Sequence record: NC_022096.1
Reading direction: 5' to 3' (one strand)
DNA length: 64,000 nt
Every line of letters starts with the position of its first letter. The first letter of the stretch is position 1. The notes under the pieces were generated by a model. It made no database searches. It was not told the origin of the DNA and saw nothing but the letters and a program-made list of their open reading frames with translations. The position numbers and the translations under genes were made by a program. This document shows positions 56,778 to 62,621 of the stretch, one piece after another.

Positions 56778-57451
56778 CTGAGCATCAGGTATTGCCTGAG
56801 GAAATCGCCAATAACCAACGGCTGCTGCGCATCCACATTTCGCTGACGTCCGAAGAACTGCGTGAGTATTTTGCCATGCGCTCTGCGTGCCGAGAGCTTC
56901 CAGCAGGATCGGAAGCCCAACGTGCTCTCGTTGGCAATTTCACCCAACGCTTCTCTGATTTCGTGGCTGACTGGAAGACGTTTGGTGTTACGCAGTACCC
57001 GACGCCGCTGCTTCCGTCGCTGCCGTACAACTACTTCGCCACGATCGACCGTGAGCACGCATCTGGTGCCGTGCTCTTTCTGCTAGCGAACCCGTCGCCG
57101 CAGAGTCGCGCAATCTACGCCCATTGGGCGACGTGGAGAGCAATGCTGGCTGCGGTTGGTTTAGGTTCGTTGCATGACGATCTGTGCCAGTGGAGTTCGT
57201 ACTTGCAAGTCATGCGCAAGGTCTGCTCGCAGAAGACGTTCCCGCGTCAAACCCTCTGGGCTGAACTGATTCCGCAACTGGTGATGCGCCGCGACTTGGT
57301 AGACGGCCGCGTAACTGGCGTCGTTGCTTATGTTGCCCGCTGCATCCGAGACTGCCTTGGGTTGGATCGTAATTCCGATCGTCTGATAATCAGCGACACC
57401 GGTCTGGTAGTTGACGGACCTGCCCTTACCATTGAACGGAGACTCCCATGA
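56774..57451 (+). CDS. hypothetical protein
   Basis: Start MTEHQ by ATGA coupling. Confidence 0.7.
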   Translation: MTEHQVLPEEIANNQRLLRIHISLTSEELREYFAMRSACRELPAGSEAQRALVGNFTQRFSDFVADWKTFGVTQYPTPLLPSLPYNYFATIDREHASGAVLFLLANPSPQSRAIYAHWATWRAMLAAVGLGSLHDDLCQWSSYLQVMRKVCSQKTFPRQTLWAELIPQLVMRRDLVDGRVTGVVAYVARCIRDCLGLDRNSDRLIISDTGLVVDGPALTIERRLP

Positions 57452-58098
57452 TGGAAAACTTCCTCACGCACGACGACATCGTAACCTTCTTCTCGGACAT
57501 GGATGTCAGCGTGCAAATCCTGCAGCAACACCAGGGTTCGCAGTACACCGACATCAACGGCCAGCAGGCTGTCGCTGCGTTCGCAGAGTTCAGCGGTCAC
57601 ATTCCTTTCCCGAACACTGACGGTGATCTGCGCGAAGCGGCCGCAGCGCTCAAGCGCAAACTGCGCGAAGCTCGTGGCGACGCCAACACCGTACTGGTTC
57701 GTTCCATGGTCGCCACCTCGGCACCCACAGGCGTGTCCTTGTTCGCACACTGCGCCTTCGTCAAGGCCTTCGTCGAAGTCGATCCGCGCACTGAGCGCGT
57801 TCGTCGTTTGGTTGAGCGCGGCGAGTGCTGCAACGTCGGCGATGTGGCTCACGCTCTGATCCTCGGCTATCGCTGCGCCCGACCTACGTGGGAGAACGAT
57901 GCGTTCATCTACCTGCAGAACGCGAGCGAGTTCAAGGTCAATCGCGCACCTCTGCTCGGTATTTTCCCCGAGGGCACCAACATCAAGTTCGAGGCGCACA
58001 TCGATCAGTACCAAGACGACGGCAGTGTTCGCGTCTGGTCGCCGAGTGTTGCCGACATCCTGGCCACCGACTGGATCATCCTGGCTCACGAAGTGTGA
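57448..58098 (+). CDS. DUF2829 / Tad2-like domain protein with an extra N-terminal domain
   Basis: AL..G.RCARPTWE....IYL..VNRAPLLGIFPEGT.I....HID....DG....WSPSVADILATDW follows the DUF2829 pattern. Confidence 0.75.
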   Translation: MMENFLTHDDIVTFFSDMDVSVQILQQHQGSQYTDINGQQAVAAFAEFSGHIPFPNTDGDLREAAAALKRKLREARGDANTVLVRSMVATSAPTGVSLFAHCAFVKAFVEVDPRTERVRRLVERGECCNVGDVAHALILGYRCARPTWENDAFIYLQNASEFKVNRAPLLGIFPEGTNIKFEAHIDQYQDDGSVRVWSPSVADILATDWIILAHEV

Positions 58099-58227
58099 CA
58101 GCCGAAGTCGAAAATGCTAATTGACTAAGCACTGAAAAGTGTAAACAAAGTTCACTGGTCACTGCGAGTGCGTCGGAAGTCCCCCGACATTCAACCGATG
58201 CCCACACTCCTCGCAGTGATCCTTTTT

Positions 58228-58303
<76 letters not shown>

Positions 58304-58325
58304 TATTCTCTGGAGATACACGAAC

Positions 58326-58799
58326 ATGCCGCAAGTTTCTGCGCCAGAAGGCGATGCGCTACTCGACCTCGCCAACATGCCTGATCCTGCCATCGACGAT
58401 GCGTTCGATCTTCACCTGATCGAGGCGAATGACGGCGTATGTCGTGCGGTCGCGCCGATCTTCAAGTCCCTGCAACTGGCGCTGTCCGATATGAGTTACA
58501 CGGACAACGGTGCGCAGTACAAGGAAGAAACTGGACATCGCGGTGCGCTGACGCTGGAGTTCTTCAACAACGTCGGTGGTCAGCAGTGGATCGACGGTTG
58601 CGACGCGCTCATCGCCGAACTCGATGCCGTTGTATTCCACGTGTACCATGCCAACGGCGAGCTGTACAGCGAACTCCGCTTCTCTGGCTTGACCGAGCCG
58701 GAGTTCACCCGCGAGTTCTCGCACAGCGATCCGACAGTGCAGGTCCTGCAGTACGTCTGGCTGTTTGCCGACGTCAAGGAAACTGTGAAAGAGCAGTAA
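58326..58799 (+). CDS. hypothetical protein
   Basis: 157-aa ORF with GGAG SD. Confidence 0.7.
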   Translation: MPQVSAPEGDALLDLANMPDPAIDDAFDLHLIEANDGVCRAVAPIFKSLQLALSDMSYTDNGAQYKEETGHRGALTLEFFNNVGGQQWIDGCDALIAELDAVVFHVYHANGELYSELRFSGLTEPEFTREFSHSDPTVQVLQYVWLFADVKETVKEQ

Positions 58800-58805
58800 A
58801 GAACA

Positions 58806-59045
58806 TCCGACCGCCGATTGCGTGCTCGTCCCACGTGATCGACGGTTTTGGCAGCGACTCCGCTAAGCTGCCGACCAGATGGGTGTGCGGAAGGGTTCGG
58901 CGGAGGTAGCAACTTCGCCGTCGATTGGCCAGTGCAGCGCGTCCTCAGCGTACTCGTCCTACGCAGTCCTCAGCGCTGTACCGCCGTTAGCGTTTACCAA
59001 GCGCCTGCCGAATGCCTGCTCGTCCCAGGATTGGCTGGCCAAAAG
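58806..59045 (+). ncRNA. candidate ncRNA with three CUCGUCC-loop hairpins
   Basis: Identical loops at 58825-31, 58953-59 and 59019-25 on different stems; G-U pairs favour the plus strand. Confidence 0.65.
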
Positions 59046-59111
59046 ACGCAAAGCCCTGCTCGACTTTCCGGTGGAGTAGTAACCGGCTCGATTACTTGAA
59101 GGAGAACAGGC

Positions 59112-59348
59112 ATGTTCCTTTCGCTTTGCCTTGGGCTTGCTCTGGTGTGCGTTGAGCCGACTGCTCCGCCTACACGACCAGATGTCGTGTACTACCAGAC
59201 AGAGACCCGCATGGTTGCTGTTCGGGAATACACCGAACCAAAAGAAGTCGCCGCACTTCCGGAACAGAGTGGCGGTGCGCCCTATCCACGATCAGCGCCT
59301 AACGACCGCGGTCGTGAAGGCCACCGATGTACCATCGGGGTTGCCTAG
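59112..59348 (+). CDS. small protein with hydrophobic N-terminus
   Basis: GGAG SD; MFLSLCLGLALVC. Confidence 0.5.
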   Translation: MFLSLCLGLALVCVEPTAPPTRPDVVYYQTETRMVAVREYTEPKEVAALPEQSGGAPYPRSAPNDRGREGHRCTIGVA

Positions 59349-59564
59349 CTGTCCGGAGCTTCCGCGATCCCGCCCCAAACCGAAACACCACATCGCTAGG
59401 CTTAACGGCCAACAAAATCGCTGAGAGCGAATGAAGTGCGCGAGAAATCGTAGGCACTAAGAAAGGGCAAGGCGGCACGTTAGAGAACAAGGCAAGAGGC
59501 TGACTCGCTGGATTTAGCGACCAGATGCGCCGGGAAACAAACCTCTGCCGCCTGCCAACCTAAA

Positions 59565-59641
59565 GCGGACTGATGAGTGGTTCAAGTCCACATGGCGAAA
59601 GCCTCGGGTGAAAGGCCCACGAAACTCAAACGAGTATCCGC
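59565..59641 (+). ncRNA. type I hammerhead ribozyme
   Basis: Stem I GCGGA/TCCGC, core CTGATGA, stem II GTGG/CCAC, GAAA, stem III CTC-aaac-GAG, GUA cleavage triplet (predicted cut after 59636). Confidence 0.85.
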
Positions 59642-59916
59642 ATGAACGCCGCTCCTGGATGAGCGGTGGGTTCAAGTACACCGACCCACTAATCGGGTCG
59701 TTTCTCGGAGCTGCTTCTGCTGAGATTTCTGTGCGTAGTGAGAAGCCATAGGAGCCTTCGGATACCTGGTCGGCTCATGCCGATAGCGCTTTTTCATCGG
59801 CGCTATCGTACAGGGTTATGGTGGTCATGTGAAACACAAGCACATGCACGCTGCACTCGTTCCCGCCCGCGAGTTCCACCATGCCTGCGGTGAAAGCCAC
59901 AGGTGCAGCCTATTTA

Positions 59917-60081
59917 TGCCATCACGCTCGGCAACGTGCTGAGAAGAAAGAAACGATAAGGCGAGTCTACATACGCCGATCGGCCGCATAGCAGCCCATT
60001 GTGGCAGCCGCATAGTGCCGATTGCCGTTGCGACCAAGCACTTGGACACAAACGCTTCTTGAGTCGTCGAGCGTGATGGCA
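59917..60081 (+). ncRNA. candidate long-stem structured RNA
   Basis: 14-bp perfect closing stem TGCCATCACGCTCG/CGAGCGTGATGGCA, inner stems GAGAAG/CTTCTT and CGATCGGC/GCCGATTG around a central bubble. Confidence 0.5.
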
Positions 60082-60105
60082 CCCTATTGAACAGAGGTAA
60101 CACGT

Positions 60106-60288
60106 ATGTGTATTTGCCGCCGTGCATGGTTCCTGATTGTCGTCAGCGCATTGTACCTGTTGGGTTGCGTTGTCGCATGGTCCATGGGTTGTCTGAATGT
60201 TTACGTCAACCCGGCACAGCTGGTATACGTTGCCGTTCTCTCTGTTCCGCTGTGGTGCAAGTCAGTAGGACGTTTGCTTCACATGTGA
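60106..60288 (+). CDS. small two-TM membrane protein
   Basis: GAGGT SD; two hydrophobic segments. Confidence 0.6.
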   Translation: MCICRRAWFLIVVSALYLLGCVVAWSMGCLNVYVNPAQLVYVAVLSVPLWCKSVGRLLHM

Positions 60289-60294
60289 GTCTGT

Positions 60295-60388
60295 GACCCA
60301 GTAGCTCAGTTGGTAGAGCGCGTGAACGCCTGCGCCGATAGCGGGAGTAACGTCATAGAGGTCGAGAGTTCAAATCTCTCCTGGGTCT
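60295..60388 (+). ncRNA. tRNA-like RNA with expanded anticodon arm
   Basis: Acceptor GACCCAG/CTGGGTC, D arm GCTC-agttggta-GAGC, T arm GAGAG-ttcaaat-CTCTC; 27-nt insert in place of the 7-nt anticodon loop; no CCA. Confidence 0.75.
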
Positions 60389-60405
60389 GCCTATTTCTGT
60401 AAAGG

Positions 60406-60615
60406 ATGTACACGATGTTGCCGTCAATGCACTTTCCACTAAAGCGTCCTGTGCTTACTCCAGAAGAAGCCAGTGCGTCGCGTGCCAGAACCCTTGAGGC
60501 TATTCGCAAATGCCGCGAAGCCCAAGCTGAACTGGAGCGAGTTTGCCGTGAGAAAGGCATTGAGATTCCGGTGATGGTCTGTCGTTCTAGTTTCCGAGTT
60601 CGTTCGGGTCGTTAG
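60406..60615 (+). CDS. hypothetical protein
   Basis: 69-aa ORF between the tRNA-like RNA and tRNA-Lys; end overlaps the tRNA 5' end. Confidence 0.5.
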   Translation: MYTMLPSMHFPLKRPVLTPEEASASRARTLEAIRKCREAQAELERVCREKGIEIPVMVCRSSFRVRSGR

Positions 60616-60681
60616 CTCAGTTGGTAGAGCATGGCGCTTTTAACGCCGTGGTCGTTGGTTCGAGTCCAACACGACCCACCA
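60606..60681 (+). tRNA. tRNA-Lys(UUU), copy 1
   Basis: 76 nt, TGGCG-CTTTTAA-CGCCG anticodon arm, CCA. Confidence 0.93.
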
Positions 60682-60689
60682 GTTTCATA

Positions 60690-60765
60690 GGCCCCATAGT
60701 CGAGCGGTTAAGACGCTTGCCTGTCACGCAAGAAATCGCGGGTTCGATTCCCGCTGGGGTCGCCA
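60690..60765 (+). tRNA. tRNA-Asp(GUC)
   Basis: 76 nt, CTTGC-CTGTCAC-GCAAG anticodon arm, CCA. Confidence 0.95.
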
Positions 60766-60766
60766 T

Positions 60767-60843
60767 AGGACGTTAGCTCAGTTGGTTAGAGCATCTGACT
60801 TTTAATCAGAGGGTCCTGGGTTCGAGTCCCAGACGTCCTACCA
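60767..60843 (+). tRNA. tRNA-Lys(UUU), copy 2
   Basis: 77 nt, TCTGA-CTTTTAA-TCAGA anticodon arm, CCA. Confidence 0.95.
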
Positions 60844-61128
60844 TATAAATGCCGCCGCCCACATTCTAGCTTGGTCGCCTGATTAGGCGGAGGCAACGCA
60901 GCAGCTTGTTCAGTTTCGTCACGGCTTCTGAACTACCTTGCAGCCAAGAGCGGGAAGAGCGCTCACCTATCCTGGCCTGTAGTCCGGAACACTCGGGCTC
61001 GACGGTGCACTCCTCGACAAGTGCGCTGTGACTGTGATTAGACTGACCGGTGTCGAGAGGATCGCCAGTGGCCGGTATATCTTCAGGGAGTGGAAGGAAA
61101 AACTCCCTTAGCCTTTTTGGAGATTGTG

Positions 61129-61326
61129 ATGCTTGCCCAATTGTTGAAGACGGCACGTAGAAAGTGGTACGACTTCTGGGATTACCAGATCGTTCGCGTT
61201 TGGCACCAAGACAGCCCTGGTGTTCGTGTGTACGTCAGTCGAAATTGGTTGCAGCGCATGATCTACAGCAAGGAGTTCTCTCACGTTGGTGAGAGGCACC
61301 TTGAACAGAATCAACCTGCCAGTTGA
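61129..61326 (+). CDS. hypothetical protein
   Basis: GGAG SD, start MLAQL. Confidence 0.6.
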   Translation: MLAQLLKTARRKWYDFWDYQIVRVWHQDSPGVRVYVSRNWLQRMIYSKEFSHVGERHLEQNQPAS

Positions 61327-61375
61327 TGCCTGCTTTGTTGCATAGCCCAAGTCTACGGAAAGACATCTACCTCAG

Positions 61376-61400
61376 CGGCGGCCTTCGGGTCGCCGTTTTT
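61376..61400 (+). terminator. intrinsic terminator
   Basis: CGGCGGCC-TTCG-GGTCGCCG-TTTTT. Confidence 0.85.
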
Positions 61401-61427
61401 GTTTGGTTCAACCCAAGGAGATACCCA

Positions 61428-61880
61428 ATGGCGTCTAACGTCTTTTCCAACTTCGACACGCGCCAGCTGGAGCGTCGTCTGTACATGCTGCTGGATGAGT
61501 TCTCCGCAGTCGATCCTGTGTTCGGCAAGATCACCGCGGCGAAACACTTCCTGACCAACTACGCCTCCATCGACATCTTCCACAACATCTGGCTGTTCGT
61601 GTTCTACGCGCTGCTCGCCGACTACGGTGACAAGTCCGCCACGATCCACGACTGGCTGTACTCCGGATATGGCATCACGCAGGCTGACGGTAGCATCTAC
61701 TACCCGACGCGCAAGGAATGCGACCAGATCATGTATCGGCTACTTCGTGCTGAGGGTGTCGCCCGATGGCGAGCGTGGATGTTCTACGCAGGTGTCCGTA
61801 TTGGCGGCAATAGCCACTACACGCAATTCGCAGATCGCGCCATGATCGAAGTGCGCGCTGCTGACTATATCGACGCATGA
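61428..61880 (+). CDS. DUF1353-like protein
   Basis: F.TNYASI, SATIHDWLY, R.ECD.I..R.L..EGV..WRAW.FYAGVRIGG; AAGGAG SD. Confidence 0.8.
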   Translation: MASNVFSNFDTRQLERRLYMLLDEFSAVDPVFGKITAAKHFLTNYASIDIFHNIWLFVFYALLADYGDKSATIHDWLYSGYGITQADGSIYYPTRKECDQIMYRLLRAEGVARWRAWMFYAGVRIGGNSHYTQFADRAMIEVRAADYIDA

Positions 61881-61885
61881 ATCTA

Positions 61886-61908
61886 GGCGGCCTCCGGGTC
61901 GCCTTTTT
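61886..61908 (+). terminator. intrinsic terminator
   Basis: GGCGGCC-TCCG-GGTCGCC-TTTTT. Confidence 0.85.
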
Positions 61909-61948
61909 CATTTCTGTAAATGAAGCGCAACAACATGGAGGCTTCGCA

Positions 61949-62419
61949 ATGAAGTGCAACATCAAGATTATGTGGCAGGACATCTTCGCCCGCGATACTT
62001 TGTTTGAGGCGCTGACGCCGCATACGAAGAAATTCAGCGTCTCCACGGAAGTGGATGATGGAGTTTACTGGCTTGGTGCCGATGCGGTGCAAGAGCGGAT
62101 CAGCGTGAACGTGTACGCAGCCTCTTTGGGCCGAGACAACGATGCCGTGGCCGACCGCATTGTCGAACTCTACCGAACTCGCAACGTGCGTTACGTGGCG
62201 CTCGACACTCGACACGTCAACCAAGACGTGTACCACGCCTGGCTGGAGAAACTGCAGGCGCGACTGCCCGATCCGATATACGTCTTCGACCCGTCAGTCG
62301 GCGGGCCTTACTTCGATCAACTCATTCAGGACATGAACGATGGTGTCACACGAATCCCAGAAAGAGCACTTCCAGACGCTTCGGCAACTGGCCGCGACAA
62401 TGGGGAAGAACATTGGTGA
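61949..62419 (+). CDS. hypothetical protein
   Basis: GGAGG SD, start MKCNI; CTGTAAA upstream. Confidence 0.7.
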   Translation: MKCNIKIMWQDIFARDTLFEALTPHTKKFSVSTEVDDGVYWLGADAVQERISVNVYAASLGRDNDAVADRIVELYRTRNVRYVALDTRHVNQDVYHAWLEKLQARLPDPIYVFDPSVGGPYFDQLIQDMNDGVTRIPERALPDASATGRDNGEEHW

Positions 62420-62621
62420 GTTCGTCAACAGCGGCAACGTCTTCCATCGGCCGTGTGCTGATTATCAAGGTAAAGGCGCAACGCTGACGATTACTGCCCG
62501 CGGGACCATACGCGCAAGTGTCCACACGCCAACACCCACAGGCATCGAGACTTTCTGGGGATGGACCTACATGGACGATCAACCCGGACTCAAGCGCCTG
62601 ATCAAGCGCATCGCACTCTAG
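62400..62621 (+). CDS. hypothetical protein
   Basis: Overlaps the upstream stop; start inferred. Confidence 0.55.
   Translation: MGKNIGEFVNSGNVFHRPCADYQGKGATLTITARGTIRASVHTPTPTGIETFWGWTYMDDQPGLKRLIKRIAL

What the first reader, a model, noticed from the sequence alone, without database searches (positions are those of the whole stretch)
60295..60388. tRNA-like RNA with intact acceptor, D and T arms but a 27-nt expanded anticodon arm
Seen: the anticodon stem GTGA/TCAT continues into CG/CG and CCTGC/GCGGG around a GCCGATA loop that lacks U33 and purine 37; no CCA is encoded. The rest of the cloverleaf is intact, which argues against simple decay. Inference: a tRNA mimic (decoy for anticodon nucleases or synthetases, or a ribosome/stringent-response modulator), or a tRNA carrying a small unrecognised intron or insert.
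Basis: partly seen in the sequence, partly recalled or inferred. Interest (0 to 1): 0.72.

Follow-up and report, generated by a model that had tools for sequence, protein, structure and literature searches.

The report
Conserved non-decoding tRNA-like phage RNA
Jumbo Pseudomonas phage PaBG and its uncultured relatives keep a tRNA-shaped RNA gene, filed in GenBank as tRNA-Ala, whose anticodon arm is replaced by a longer, almost unchanging hairpin, so it cannot read codons and is most likely a stable small RNA that uses the tRNA body as a carrier.

Summary
Window 60295-60388 (phage PaBG, NC_022096 122295-122388) has a 7-bp acceptor stem, D arm, 5-nt variable loop and T arm, but 38 nt where the 17-nt anticodon stem-loop should be. 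There is no U33/R37 loop and no encoded CCA.

It is not decay. Four diverged PaBG-like lineages recovered from public assemblies carry the same 93-94-nt element at the same place. Their acceptor and T stems differ by eight fully compensated pair changes. The 12-bp expanded arm, D arm and variable loop are invariant apart from one U.G to C-G change. Arm variation is confined to the terminal loop (6-7 nt) and two bulge bases.

- The GenBank name "tRNA-Ala(tgc)" is an ARAGORN artefact. There is no G3:U70, and relatives are called Ala, Arg or "???".
- No single excision yields a usable anticodon stem-loop, so it is not an intron-bearing tRNA.
- A more distant lineage has deleted it, together with the Lys/Asp tRNA block, so it is accessory.

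Best reading: a non-decoding tRNA-like RNA. The tRNA body probably supplies processing and stability, and the invariant arm is probably a sequence-specific binding module. Its partner is unknown; an anti-defence role is conjecture.

The parts
60295..60388 (+). tRNA-like RNA gene (GenBank O152_gt002, annotated 'tRNA-Ala(tgc)'), 94 nt including the discriminator
   Evidence: RF00005 48.9 bits; ARAGORN; annotation. Own covariance model R1 scores 108-132 bits in the window and nine related loci, against 53 bits or less for canonical tRNAs.
60295..60301 (+). Acceptor stem 5' strand; pairs with 60381-60387
   Evidence: 7/7 pairs. Four of the seven pairs show compensatory double changes among lineages.
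60304..60319 (+). D arm (GCUC / AGUUGGUA / GAGC), with G18 G19 for the elbow
   Evidence: Invariant apart from a 1-nt D-loop deletion in L127.
60321..60358 (+). Expanded arm, 38 nt, in place of the 17-nt anticodon stem-loop: 12 bp in three helical segments plus A60326 bulge, bulge 60346-60350 and A60357 bulge
   Evidence: 11 of 12 pairs never vary; one changes U.G to C-G. No Rfam family matches the arm alone. It is unique in the window.
60329..60345 (+). Apical hairpin CCUGC / GCCGAUA / GCGGG
   Evidence: Stem conserved. The loop is GCCGAUA, GCGAUA, GCCGUA or GCCAUA in different lineages.
60346..60350 (+). 5-nt bulge AGUAA (AACAA in the L132-L135 lineage); A at positions 1, 4 and 5 invariant
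   Evidence: Alignment A2. The change breaks the rival MFE register.
60359..60380 (+). Variable loop AGGUC and T arm (GAGAG / UUCAAAU / CUCUC)
   Evidence: Variable loop invariant. Four of five T-stem pairs are changed on both sides in L127.
60381..60391 (+). Acceptor 3' strand, discriminator U60388, and the trailer GCC
   Evidence: Trailers in the four lineages are U-GCC-U, A-CC-U, U-GCC-U and C-ACC-G. A purine followed by CC is kept, and the base after CC is never A.
60106..60288 (+). Unannotated 60-aa hydrophobic ORF whose stop lies 4-6 nt before the element in every lineage that has the element
   Evidence: Translation; homologs at 82-83% identity; remoter homologs; gene calls in relatives.

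Best explanation
The element is a functional, non-decoding tRNA-like small RNA of PaBG-like jumbo phages.

Shown:
- It keeps a tRNA cloverleaf under structural selection.
- It has no usable anticodon loop.
- Its expanded arm, D arm and variable loop (the 'anticodon-D' half of the L shape) are held constant at the sequence level. The acceptor/T half is free to change as long as it stays paired.

Inferred mechanism:
- The acceptor/T minihelix and the D/T elbow act as a carrier. RNase P would cut at G60295 (leader base -1 is U in three of four lineages).
- The 3' trailer would be trimmed back to the conserved purine-CC, and the host CCA-adding enzyme could add the final A.
- The compact tRNA fold would make the RNA long-lived. 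This is what the engineered 'tRNA scaffold' does for inserted hairpins in E. coli.
- The invariant 38-nt arm is the working part. It is most likely a sequence-specific binding site for a protein, or possibly another ligand, which it titrates or recruits.

Context and role:
- It sits in an accessory block with phage tRNAs (Lys-UUU, Asp, Thr) and a Tad2-like protein.
- It was lost together with the Lys/Asp tRNA block in one lineage.
- A role in coping with host defences or host RNA metabolism is therefore the leading guess. That step is conjecture.
For: Identity and context: the window is phage PaBG.

Structure: RF00005 hit with the insert; cloverleaf with a long arm.

Conservation:
- Relatives were found through flanking proteins. 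All carry the element 4-6 nt after the 60-aa ORF.
- Alignment A2 shows 100% pairing and 8 compensatory pairs, all in the acceptor and T stems. The arm has 11/12 invariant pairs plus one U.G to C-G change.
- The flanking DNA of these lineages is only 75-78% identical. Their canonical Thr, Lys and Asp tRNAs vary freely in the anticodon stems and all encode CCA.

RNA-level rather than coding constraint: there are 1-nt indels in the loops, and G.U pairs that work on the + strand only.

Not a decoder and not intron-bearing.

Accessory: absent from the syntenic lineage L136-L138 through a deletion that left the 3' end of the downstream ORF. The Lys/Asp tRNAs are missing there too.

Neighbourhood: Tad2-like domain in gp163.

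Carrier principle: the tRNA scaffold, with the anticodon stem-loop replaced by a hairpin, is processed and stable in E. coli (PMC3753655).

Similar designs elsewhere: 33 of 112 insert-bearing type-I tRNA bodies sampled in IMG/VR also cannot be reduced to a normal anticodon arm.
Against: - There are no expression, processing or binding data. RNase P cleavage, 3' trimming, A addition and stability are inferred from general knowledge, not shown.
- No partner was identified. Neighbouring small proteins have no family match, and the downstream gene is not constant between lineages.
- Only four lineages are known, so the arm's invariance gives no covariation for the arm helices themselves.
- Three of four lineages would have a 5-nt rather than 4-nt 3' overhang, which is unusual for RNase P and CCA-enzyme substrates.
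- The anti-defence link rests on gene neighbourhood and co-loss only.
Confidence: 0.5

Rival explanations
1. Cis-acting RNA punctuation. The tRNA-like fold exists mainly to be cut by RNase P and 3' processing enzymes. This would define the 3' end of the upstream 60-aa membrane-protein mRNA and the 5' end of downstream RNAs, or protect that mRNA's 3' end. The released RNA would have no role of its own.
For: The element always starts 4-6 nt after the stop codon of the conserved 60-aa ORF. The same transcript region holds a hammerhead-like self-cleaving motif upstream, which suggests a heavily processed RNA. Only the shape of the acceptor/T half is conserved, and that half is what RNase P needs.
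Against: An ordinary tRNA, or a minihelix, would do this job. It does not explain why 38 nt of arm, the D arm and the variable loop are frozen in sequence while canonical tRNAs of the same phages vary. The lineage L136-L138 keeps the 61-aa ORF without the element.
Confidence: 0.2
2. A chargeable tRNA mimic. The RNA would be aminoacylated by a synthetase that ignores the anticodon. It would then serve as a decoy for a synthetase or a tRNA-modifying toxin, or as an amino-acid donor outside the ribosome.
For: It has an intact acceptor/T minihelix and elbow, with a conserved purine-CC after the stem that could be completed to CCA. Some synthetases do not read the anticodon (general knowledge).
Against: - The discriminator base, an identity element for most synthetases, differs among lineages (U, A, U, C).
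- Three lineages have an extra base before CC.
- There is no G3:U70 for AlaRS.
- The D arm is type I, with no long variable arm in the supported fold, so it is not Ser- or Leu-like.
Confidence: 0.08
3. An intron-bearing tRNA. The extra 21 nt or so would be removed by an unknown phage or host activity to give a decoding tRNA, as is assumed for the 'enigmatic introns' of huge-phage tRNAs.
For: The insert sits in the anticodon arm. Highly conserved inserts in phage tRNAs have been reported and called introns (bioRxiv 10.1101/356790). Of the insert-bearing tRNA bodies sampled in IMG/VR, 79 of 112 can be reduced to a normal anticodon arm by one excision.
Against: - An exhaustive test of all contiguous excisions in three lineages gives no stem of 4 bp or more closing a 7-nt loop with U33 and R37.
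- There is no bulge-helix-bulge geometry: a 1-nt and a 5-nt bulge lie 2 bp apart.
- 27 nt is far too small for a group I intron, and there is no Rfam hit.
- No RNA ligase or splicing endonuclease is mentioned in the PaBG genome paper.
Confidence: 0.05
4. A dead tRNA gene or software artefact: a tRNA pseudogene disrupted by a chance insertion and kept only by linkage.
For: Phage tRNA clusters often hold pseudo-tRNAs. ARAGORN's model of it is forced, with a mis-registered D stem, two mismatches in the 'anticodon stem' and a 24-nt 'variable arm'. One lineage lost it.
Against: There are eight compensatory pair changes with 100% pairing across lineages whose flanks are 75-78% identical. The insert is the most conserved part. 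The probability of 37 unchanged bases at about 80% identity per pair of lineages is about 3e-4 (own arithmetic).
Confidence: 0.03
5. The constraint is not on the RNA. The arm would be conserved because it overlaps a protein-coding frame or a DNA site such as a promoter or a protein-binding site.
For: Mechanical ORFs overlap the element (60306-60560 on the minus strand, 60310-60402 on the plus strand). PaBG promoters are unknown.
Against: - 1-nt indels inside the element (D loop and terminal loop) would shift any reading frame.
- The sequence downstream of the element differs completely between lineages.
- The G.U pairs and the U.G to C-G change fit + strand RNA pairing.
- No promoter-like or terminator-like site lies at the element.
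Confidence: 0.04

Closest known systems
Canonical bacterial and phage elongator tRNA (Rfam RF00005)
   Same: 7-bp acceptor stem, type-I D arm with G18 G19, 5-nt variable loop AGGUC, and a T arm with GUUCAAAUC. It lies in a phage tRNA cluster on the same strand.
   Different: It has a 38-nt arm instead of the 17-nt anticodon stem-loop, with no U33, no R37 and no conserved triplet. CCA is not encoded, although all neighbouring tRNAs encode it. The discriminator is not conserved.
'Enigmatic', highly conserved tRNA 'introns' of Lak megaphages and other huge phages (Devoto et al., bioRxiv 10.1101/356790)
   Same: Oversized tRNA genes in very large phage genomes. The inserted sequence is nearly identical across otherwise diverged genomes, and how it is processed is unknown.
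   Different: Those genes could be given an isotype and anticodon by eukaryote-mode tRNAscan. Here no excision restores an anticodon arm. PaBG is a cultured phage of PAO1, so this case can be tested at the bench.
Engineered 'tRNA scaffold' for recombinant RNA (Ponchon and Dardel; PMC3753655)
   Same: The architecture is the same: acceptor stem, T and D arms kept, and the anticodon stem-loop replaced by a hairpin insert. In E. coli this gives correct processing and protection from nucleases.
   Different: That is a man-made tool. This is a natural gene under selection. The likeness concerns how it may work, not ancestry.
Bacterial Y RNA YrlA (Rfam RF02553; PMC4201824)
   Same: A non-coding RNA with a tRNA-mimicking module that serves protein binding rather than decoding.
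   Different: No RF02553 match covers the element; the only weak YrlA hit lies on the Asp/Lys tRNAs. From memory: in YrlA the RNA ends lie in the Ro-binding stem, not in the acceptor stem. No Ro/Rsr gene was seen, but none was searched for.
Phage T4 stable RNAs 'species 1 and 2' (RNA C and D) of the T4 tRNA cluster (from memory; not checked here)
   Same: Small stable RNAs of unknown function, encoded among phage tRNA genes and matured by the tRNA-processing machinery.
   Different: No sequence relation was tested, and they are not in Rfam hits here. They are longer and are not simple cloverleaves with one expanded arm.
tmRNA tRNA-like domain
   Same: An acceptor/T minihelix used outside normal decoding.
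   Different: ARAGORN finds no tmRNA in the window. There is no tag reading frame or pseudoknots, and a full D arm is present.

Membership tests
Decoding tRNA (RF00005) | Acceptor stem, D arm and T arm forming a cloverleaf | tested here: met
   cmscan 48.9 bits; pair counts 100%.
Decoding tRNA (RF00005) | 5-bp anticodon stem closing a 7-nt loop with U33, an anticodon and purine 37 | tested here: not met
   38-nt arm. The terminal loop GCCGAUA has C at '33' and U at '37', and is 6 nt long with a different sequence in relatives.
Decoding tRNA (RF00005) | 3' CCA, encoded or added, and aminoacylation | not testable with these tools
   Only purine-CC is encoded, with U or G after it. Addition of A and charging need RNA work.
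tRNA-Ala (the GenBank annotation) | G3:U70 identity pair and a UGC anticodon in a normal loop | tested here: not met
   Pair 3:70 is C-G in all lineages. 'UGC' lies inside a helix. ARAGORN names the relatives Ala(tgc), Ala(cgc), Arg(cct) and ???(cgcc), and its model is forced.
tRNA with archaeal/eukaryal-type intron | Bulge-helix-bulge (3-nt bulges 4 bp apart) or a 37/38 intron whose removal leaves a canonical anticodon arm | tested here: not met
   The bulges are 1 nt and 5 nt, 2 bp apart. No excision works.
tRNA with group I intron | Catalytic core of 200 nt or more in the anticodon loop | tested here: not met
   The insert is 27 nt in place of 7. No Rfam intron hit.
tRNA pseudogene | Neutral decay: unpaired substitutions, and no preferential conservation of the defect | tested here: not met
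   8 compensatory pairs and 0 broken cells. The insert is the most conserved part.
Huge-phage tRNAs with conserved 'enigmatic introns' (Lak phages) | Oversized tRNA gene in a phage genome over 200 kb, with the insert near-identical across diverged genomes | tested here: met
   PaBG is 258 kb; insert conservation; description of the Lak case.
Huge-phage tRNAs with conserved 'enigmatic introns' (Lak phages) | An isotype and anticodon can be assigned once the insert is removed | tested here: not met
tmRNA / YrlA / other Rfam tRNA-like RNAs | Match to the family covariance model | tested here: not met
   Only RF00005 matches the element. ARAGORN finds no tmRNA.

The most novel reading that the evidence does not exclude
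The element is one example of a wider, undescribed class of phage 'natural tRNA scaffolds': tRNA bodies that carry a functional hairpin instead of an anticodon arm. In PaBG the invariant arm would be a trans-acting RNA sponge or decoy. It would bind and neutralise a host factor, for instance a tRNA-directed defence nuclease or another immune component. It would work beside the phage's replacement tRNAs and its Tad2-like protein in an anti-defence block.
Probability: 0.2. Interest if true: 0.85.

Novelty: new variant of a known kind. Interest (0 to 1): 0.62.

Why it matters
**Annotation.** A gene listed in GenBank and in two papers as tRNA-Ala cannot be one, and ARAGORN gives homologous copies four different names. 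Oversized 'tRNAs' in phage genomes therefore deserve a second look.

**Biology.** Selection that freezes the anticodon-D half of a tRNA-shaped RNA, while letting the acceptor/T half change by compensation, points to a tRNA body reused as a carrier for another function. Conserved inserts in huge-phage tRNAs were reported in 2018 from metagenomes and left unexplained. PaBG grows on the laboratory strain PAO1, so the RNA's size, ends, partners and knockout phenotype can be measured directly.

If the arm binds a host defence or RNA-processing protein, it would add an RNA-based tool to the known phage counter-defence repertoire.

Tried and rejected
- **Exact and gapped DNA patterns from the insert.** IMG/VR returned only PaBG itself, plus three chance matches inside GC-rich coding regions (L004, L005, L007). 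JGI metagenomes gave nothing in two scans, and GTDB genomes gave nothing. BLAST against 50,697 phage records found no relative of the element or of the region. Phage pPa_SNUABM_DT01 is not syntenic here. Relatives came only through flanking proteins.
- **Sarcin-ricin / loop E motif (AGUA opposite GAA) in the arm.** Rejected, because AGUAA becomes AACAA in one lineage and the register it needs is broken.
- **Kink-turn, S15-type G.U/G-C motif, CsrA/RsmA GGA site, Hfq A-R-N repeats, mimic of a 16S rRNA segment, mimic of a P. aeruginosa CRISPR repeat (RNA anti-CRISPR).** Considered from memory only. None fits the conserved positions, and none was tested formally.
- **Antisense function.** The best duplex energies of the arm against 57000-62500 on both strands (-31 to -38 kcal/mol, leaving out its own antisense strand) are no better than those of shuffled arms (-36 to -45). 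A whole-window scan timed out.
- **Repeat or mobile-element origin of the insert.** It occurs once in the window, even allowing 3 mismatches.
- **Partner among neighbours.** The 60-aa and 69-aa ORFs and gp317 have no Pfam or PHROG family. The 69-aa ORF is not constant next to the element.
- **Literature.** Searches for a described phage tRNA-like decoy or extended-anticodon-arm RNA found nothing specific.

Full report
**Where the window comes from.** The region is identical to Pseudomonas phage PaBG (NC_022096 / KF147891), a 258-kb jumbo myovirus from Lake Baikal and the sole species of Baikalvirus. Window position plus 62,000 gives the record position. The finding is locus O152_gt002, annotated 'tRNA-Ala(tgc)'. 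[quoted passage not shown]

**The observation.**
- It has a 7-bp acceptor stem, a standard type-I D arm, the variable loop AGGUC and a T arm with GUUCAAAUC.
- Between G26 and the variable loop lie 38 nt instead of 17. In order these are: C27-G64, a bulged A63, GUGA/UCAU, a bulged A32, CG/CG, a 5-nt bulge AGUAA, and CCUGC/GCGGG closing the loop GCCGAUA.
- The base after the acceptor stem is U, followed by GCC rather than CCA. The Thr, Lys, Asp and Lys tRNAs of the same cluster all encode CCA.
- Rfam's tRNA model scores 48.9 bits and treats 36 nt as an insertion in the anticodon arm.
- ARAGORN reaches 'tRNA-Ala' only by shifting the D stem, accepting two mismatches in a 6-bp 'anticodon stem' and calling the rest a 24-nt variable arm. 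Pair 3:70 is C-G, not the G:U that defines alanine tRNA.

**Finding relatives.** PaBG has no close relative among 50,697 phage records. DNA patterns taken from the insert found nothing real in IMG/VR, JGI metagenomes or GTDB genomes. Flanking proteins did work.
- gp317 (58326-58799) has a 65%-identical homolog in Logan assemblies.
- An unannotated 60-aa hydrophobic ORF (60106-60288), which ends 6 nt before the element, has homologs at 82-83% identity in three further clusters.
- These give four lineages: PaBG; L130/L131; L127-L129; L132-L135. The gene order is the same in all. Over the 1.3-kb spacer upstream, L130 is 93% identical to PaBG, and every other pair of lineages is 75-78% identical.
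- Every one of them has a 93-94-nt element 4-6 nt after that ORF. ARAGORN names these homologous copies Ala(tgc), Ala(cgc), Arg(cct) and '???(cgcc)', which shows the names carry no information.

**Pattern of change (alignment A2).**
- The acceptor stem differs at four of seven pairs and the T stem at four of five. Every change is compensated: 100% of 168 cells are paired, and none of 500 shuffles reaches the observed values.
- By contrast the D arm, G26, the variable loop and all 12 pairs of the expanded arm are constant. The one exception is U37.G49 becoming C-G in L135.
- Inside the arm, change is limited to the terminal loop (GCCGAUA, GCGAUA, GCCGUA, GCCAUA) and the two middle bases of the bulge (AGUAA to AACAA).
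- The bulge change breaks the inner pairs of the single-sequence MFE fold in 3 of 6 sequences.
- The canonical Thr, Lys and Asp tRNAs of the same phages vary in all stems, including the anticodon stems.
- In three-dimensional terms, the anticodon-D half of the L is frozen in sequence, while the acceptor/T half is constrained only in shape. The three-dimensional reading is inference from standard tRNA structure.

**What this excludes.**
- A decaying pseudogene does not accumulate eight compensated pairs while keeping its 'defect' as its most conserved part.
- A coding or DNA-site constraint is unlikely. There are 1-nt indels in the D loop and terminal loop. The G.U pairs work only on the + strand RNA. 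The sequence downstream of the element is unrelated between lineages.
- A decoding tRNA is excluded, because the loop has neither constant length nor a constant triplet.
- An intron-bearing tRNA is very unlikely. I tried every contiguous excision in three lineages, and none leaves a stem of 4 bp or more closing a 7-nt loop with U33 and R37. The bulges do not form a bulge-helix-bulge motif. The insert is far too small for a group I intron, and no Rfam family matches the arm.
- A conserved aminoacylation identity is unlikely, because the discriminator is U, A, U or C. Three lineages also have an extra base before the conserved CC (trailers U-GCC-U, A-CC-U, U-GCC-U, C-ACC-G).

**What it most likely is.** It is a stable, non-decoding tRNA-like RNA. 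Its design matches the engineered 'tRNA scaffold', in which the anticodon stem-loop is replaced by a hairpin of interest and the tRNA body secures processing and nuclease resistance in E. coli (PMC3753655).

The following steps rest on established knowledge of bacterial tRNA maturation and were not tested here:
- RNase P recognises the acceptor/T stack, the elbow, a U at -1 (present in three of four lineages) and the purine-CC after the stem.
- 3' exonucleases stall at CC.
- The CCA-adding enzyme can supply the last A.

The frozen arm would then be the working module, most simply a sequence-specific protein-binding site. I could not identify the partner. Neighbouring small proteins have no family match. 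The downstream gene differs between lineages. The arm shows no above-background complementarity to the surrounding 5.5 kb.

**Accessory status and context.** A profile search with the 60-aa ORF found a more distant, abundant, syntenic lineage (L136-L138) and two short contigs. A covariance model of the element scores 108-132 bits in the four lineages but finds only ordinary tRNAs in these further loci.
- In L136 the ORF's stop is followed directly by the last 22 codons of the homolog of the 69-aa ORF that follows the element in PaBG. A deletion therefore removed the element.
- The Lys/Asp tRNA block is missing there too.
- The element is thus dispensable, and it travels with the phage tRNAs.
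- About 2 kb upstream, gp163 carries a Tad2-like (anti-Thoeris) domain.

This is the basis, and the only basis, for guessing at a role in dealing with host defences.

**A possible wider class.** IMG/VR was scanned for the same type-I D arm followed by a T loop 11-41 nt too far away.
- Of 112 hits with good acceptor stems, 79 can be reduced to a normal anticodon arm by one excision. Sixty of these are tRNA-Tyr(GUA).
- The other 33 cannot be reduced, like PaBG's. All of those whose contig names were listed come from contigs not labelled as giant-virus bins. Many form a single long irregular hairpin in place of the anticodon arm.
- ARAGORN misses them or gives them odd names.
- The Lak megaphage study had already noted 'enigmatic', near-identical inserts in huge-phage tRNAs.

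This survey is a sample with one fixed D-arm sequence and simple criteria. It is a lead, not a census.

**Verdict.**
- The pseudogene and intron readings are rejected.
- The 'tRNA mimic' reading is supported in the sense of a selected, non-decoding tRNA-shaped RNA.
- Which factor it mimics or binds is open.
- It is a new variant of known kinds (tRNA-like non-coding RNAs; conserved inserts in huge-phage tRNAs), and it sits in a phage that can be studied at the bench.

Noticed in passing
window 59280-60075 (+), most conserved at 59290-59830: About 800 nt with no ORF over 63 aa inside its most conserved part (59290-59830), and unannotated in NC_022096. It is more conserved between lineages than the neighbouring gp317 coding sequence: 70-78% of columns are invariant across four lineages. 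RNAalifold predicts 217 pairs, 27 of them with compensatory double changes among only four sequences. No Rfam family matches at E<=5. This is a candidate large structured non-coding RNA next to the tRNA cluster.
   Followed up: partly
window 59565-59641 (+): Hammerhead-like type I ribozyme core inside that region:
- Stem I: 59565-59569 with 59637-59641.
- CUGAUGA at 59570-59576.
- An unusually large branched stem II (59577-59620), which includes a T-loop-like hairpin.
- GAAA at 59621-59624.
- Stem III closed by a 4-6-nt loop.
- H17 is A59636 (C in one lineage).

The predicted cut is between 59636 and 59637. All 19 proposed pairs hold in four lineages, and stem I has two compensatory changes. 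Rfam hammerhead models do not call it.
   Followed up: partly
window 57448-58098 (+), gp163: The C-terminal part matches the Tad2-like (Thoeris anti-defence 2) domain PF11195, E=2.8e-12. The homologs in all relatives carry it too. It is annotated only as a hypothetical protein.
   Followed up: partly
window 60106-60288 and 60406-60615 (+): Two small ORFs are missing from the GenBank annotation.
- A 60-aa hydrophobic protein, conserved at 82-83% identity, with remoter homologs.
- A 69-aa basic protein, present in some relatives; its 3' end overlaps the start of tRNA-Lys.

The record shows no coding sequence between 120799 and 123129.
   Followed up: partly
L127 10966-11056: In one relative, about 90 extra nt follow the element. 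They can form a 7-bp acceptor-like stem and a GGUUCGAUUCC T arm around an irregular middle. ARAGORN does not call it, and the only Rfam hit is a weak tRNA-Sec match at 14 bits. It is either a second aberrant tRNA-like RNA or a decayed tRNA.
   Followed up: partly
IMG/VR loci L008-L126: Many phage contigs carry type-I tRNA bodies whose anticodon arm is a long hairpin with no recoverable anticodon loop (33 of 112 sampled). One family of 11 near-identical copies comes from several metagenomes (L010, L013, L025, L038, L044, L045, L048, L057, L072, L085, L113).
   Followed up: partly
window 60860-61000 (+): A non-coding stretch just after the last tRNA-Lys is 91% identical to the L127 lineage, well above the local background.
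   Followed up: no
L132 6219-8069; L130 4129-4202: In relatives, the DNA cytosine methylase gene of one lineage carries an intein-splicing domain. The tRNA-Thr of L130 has an atypical D arm.
   Followed up: no
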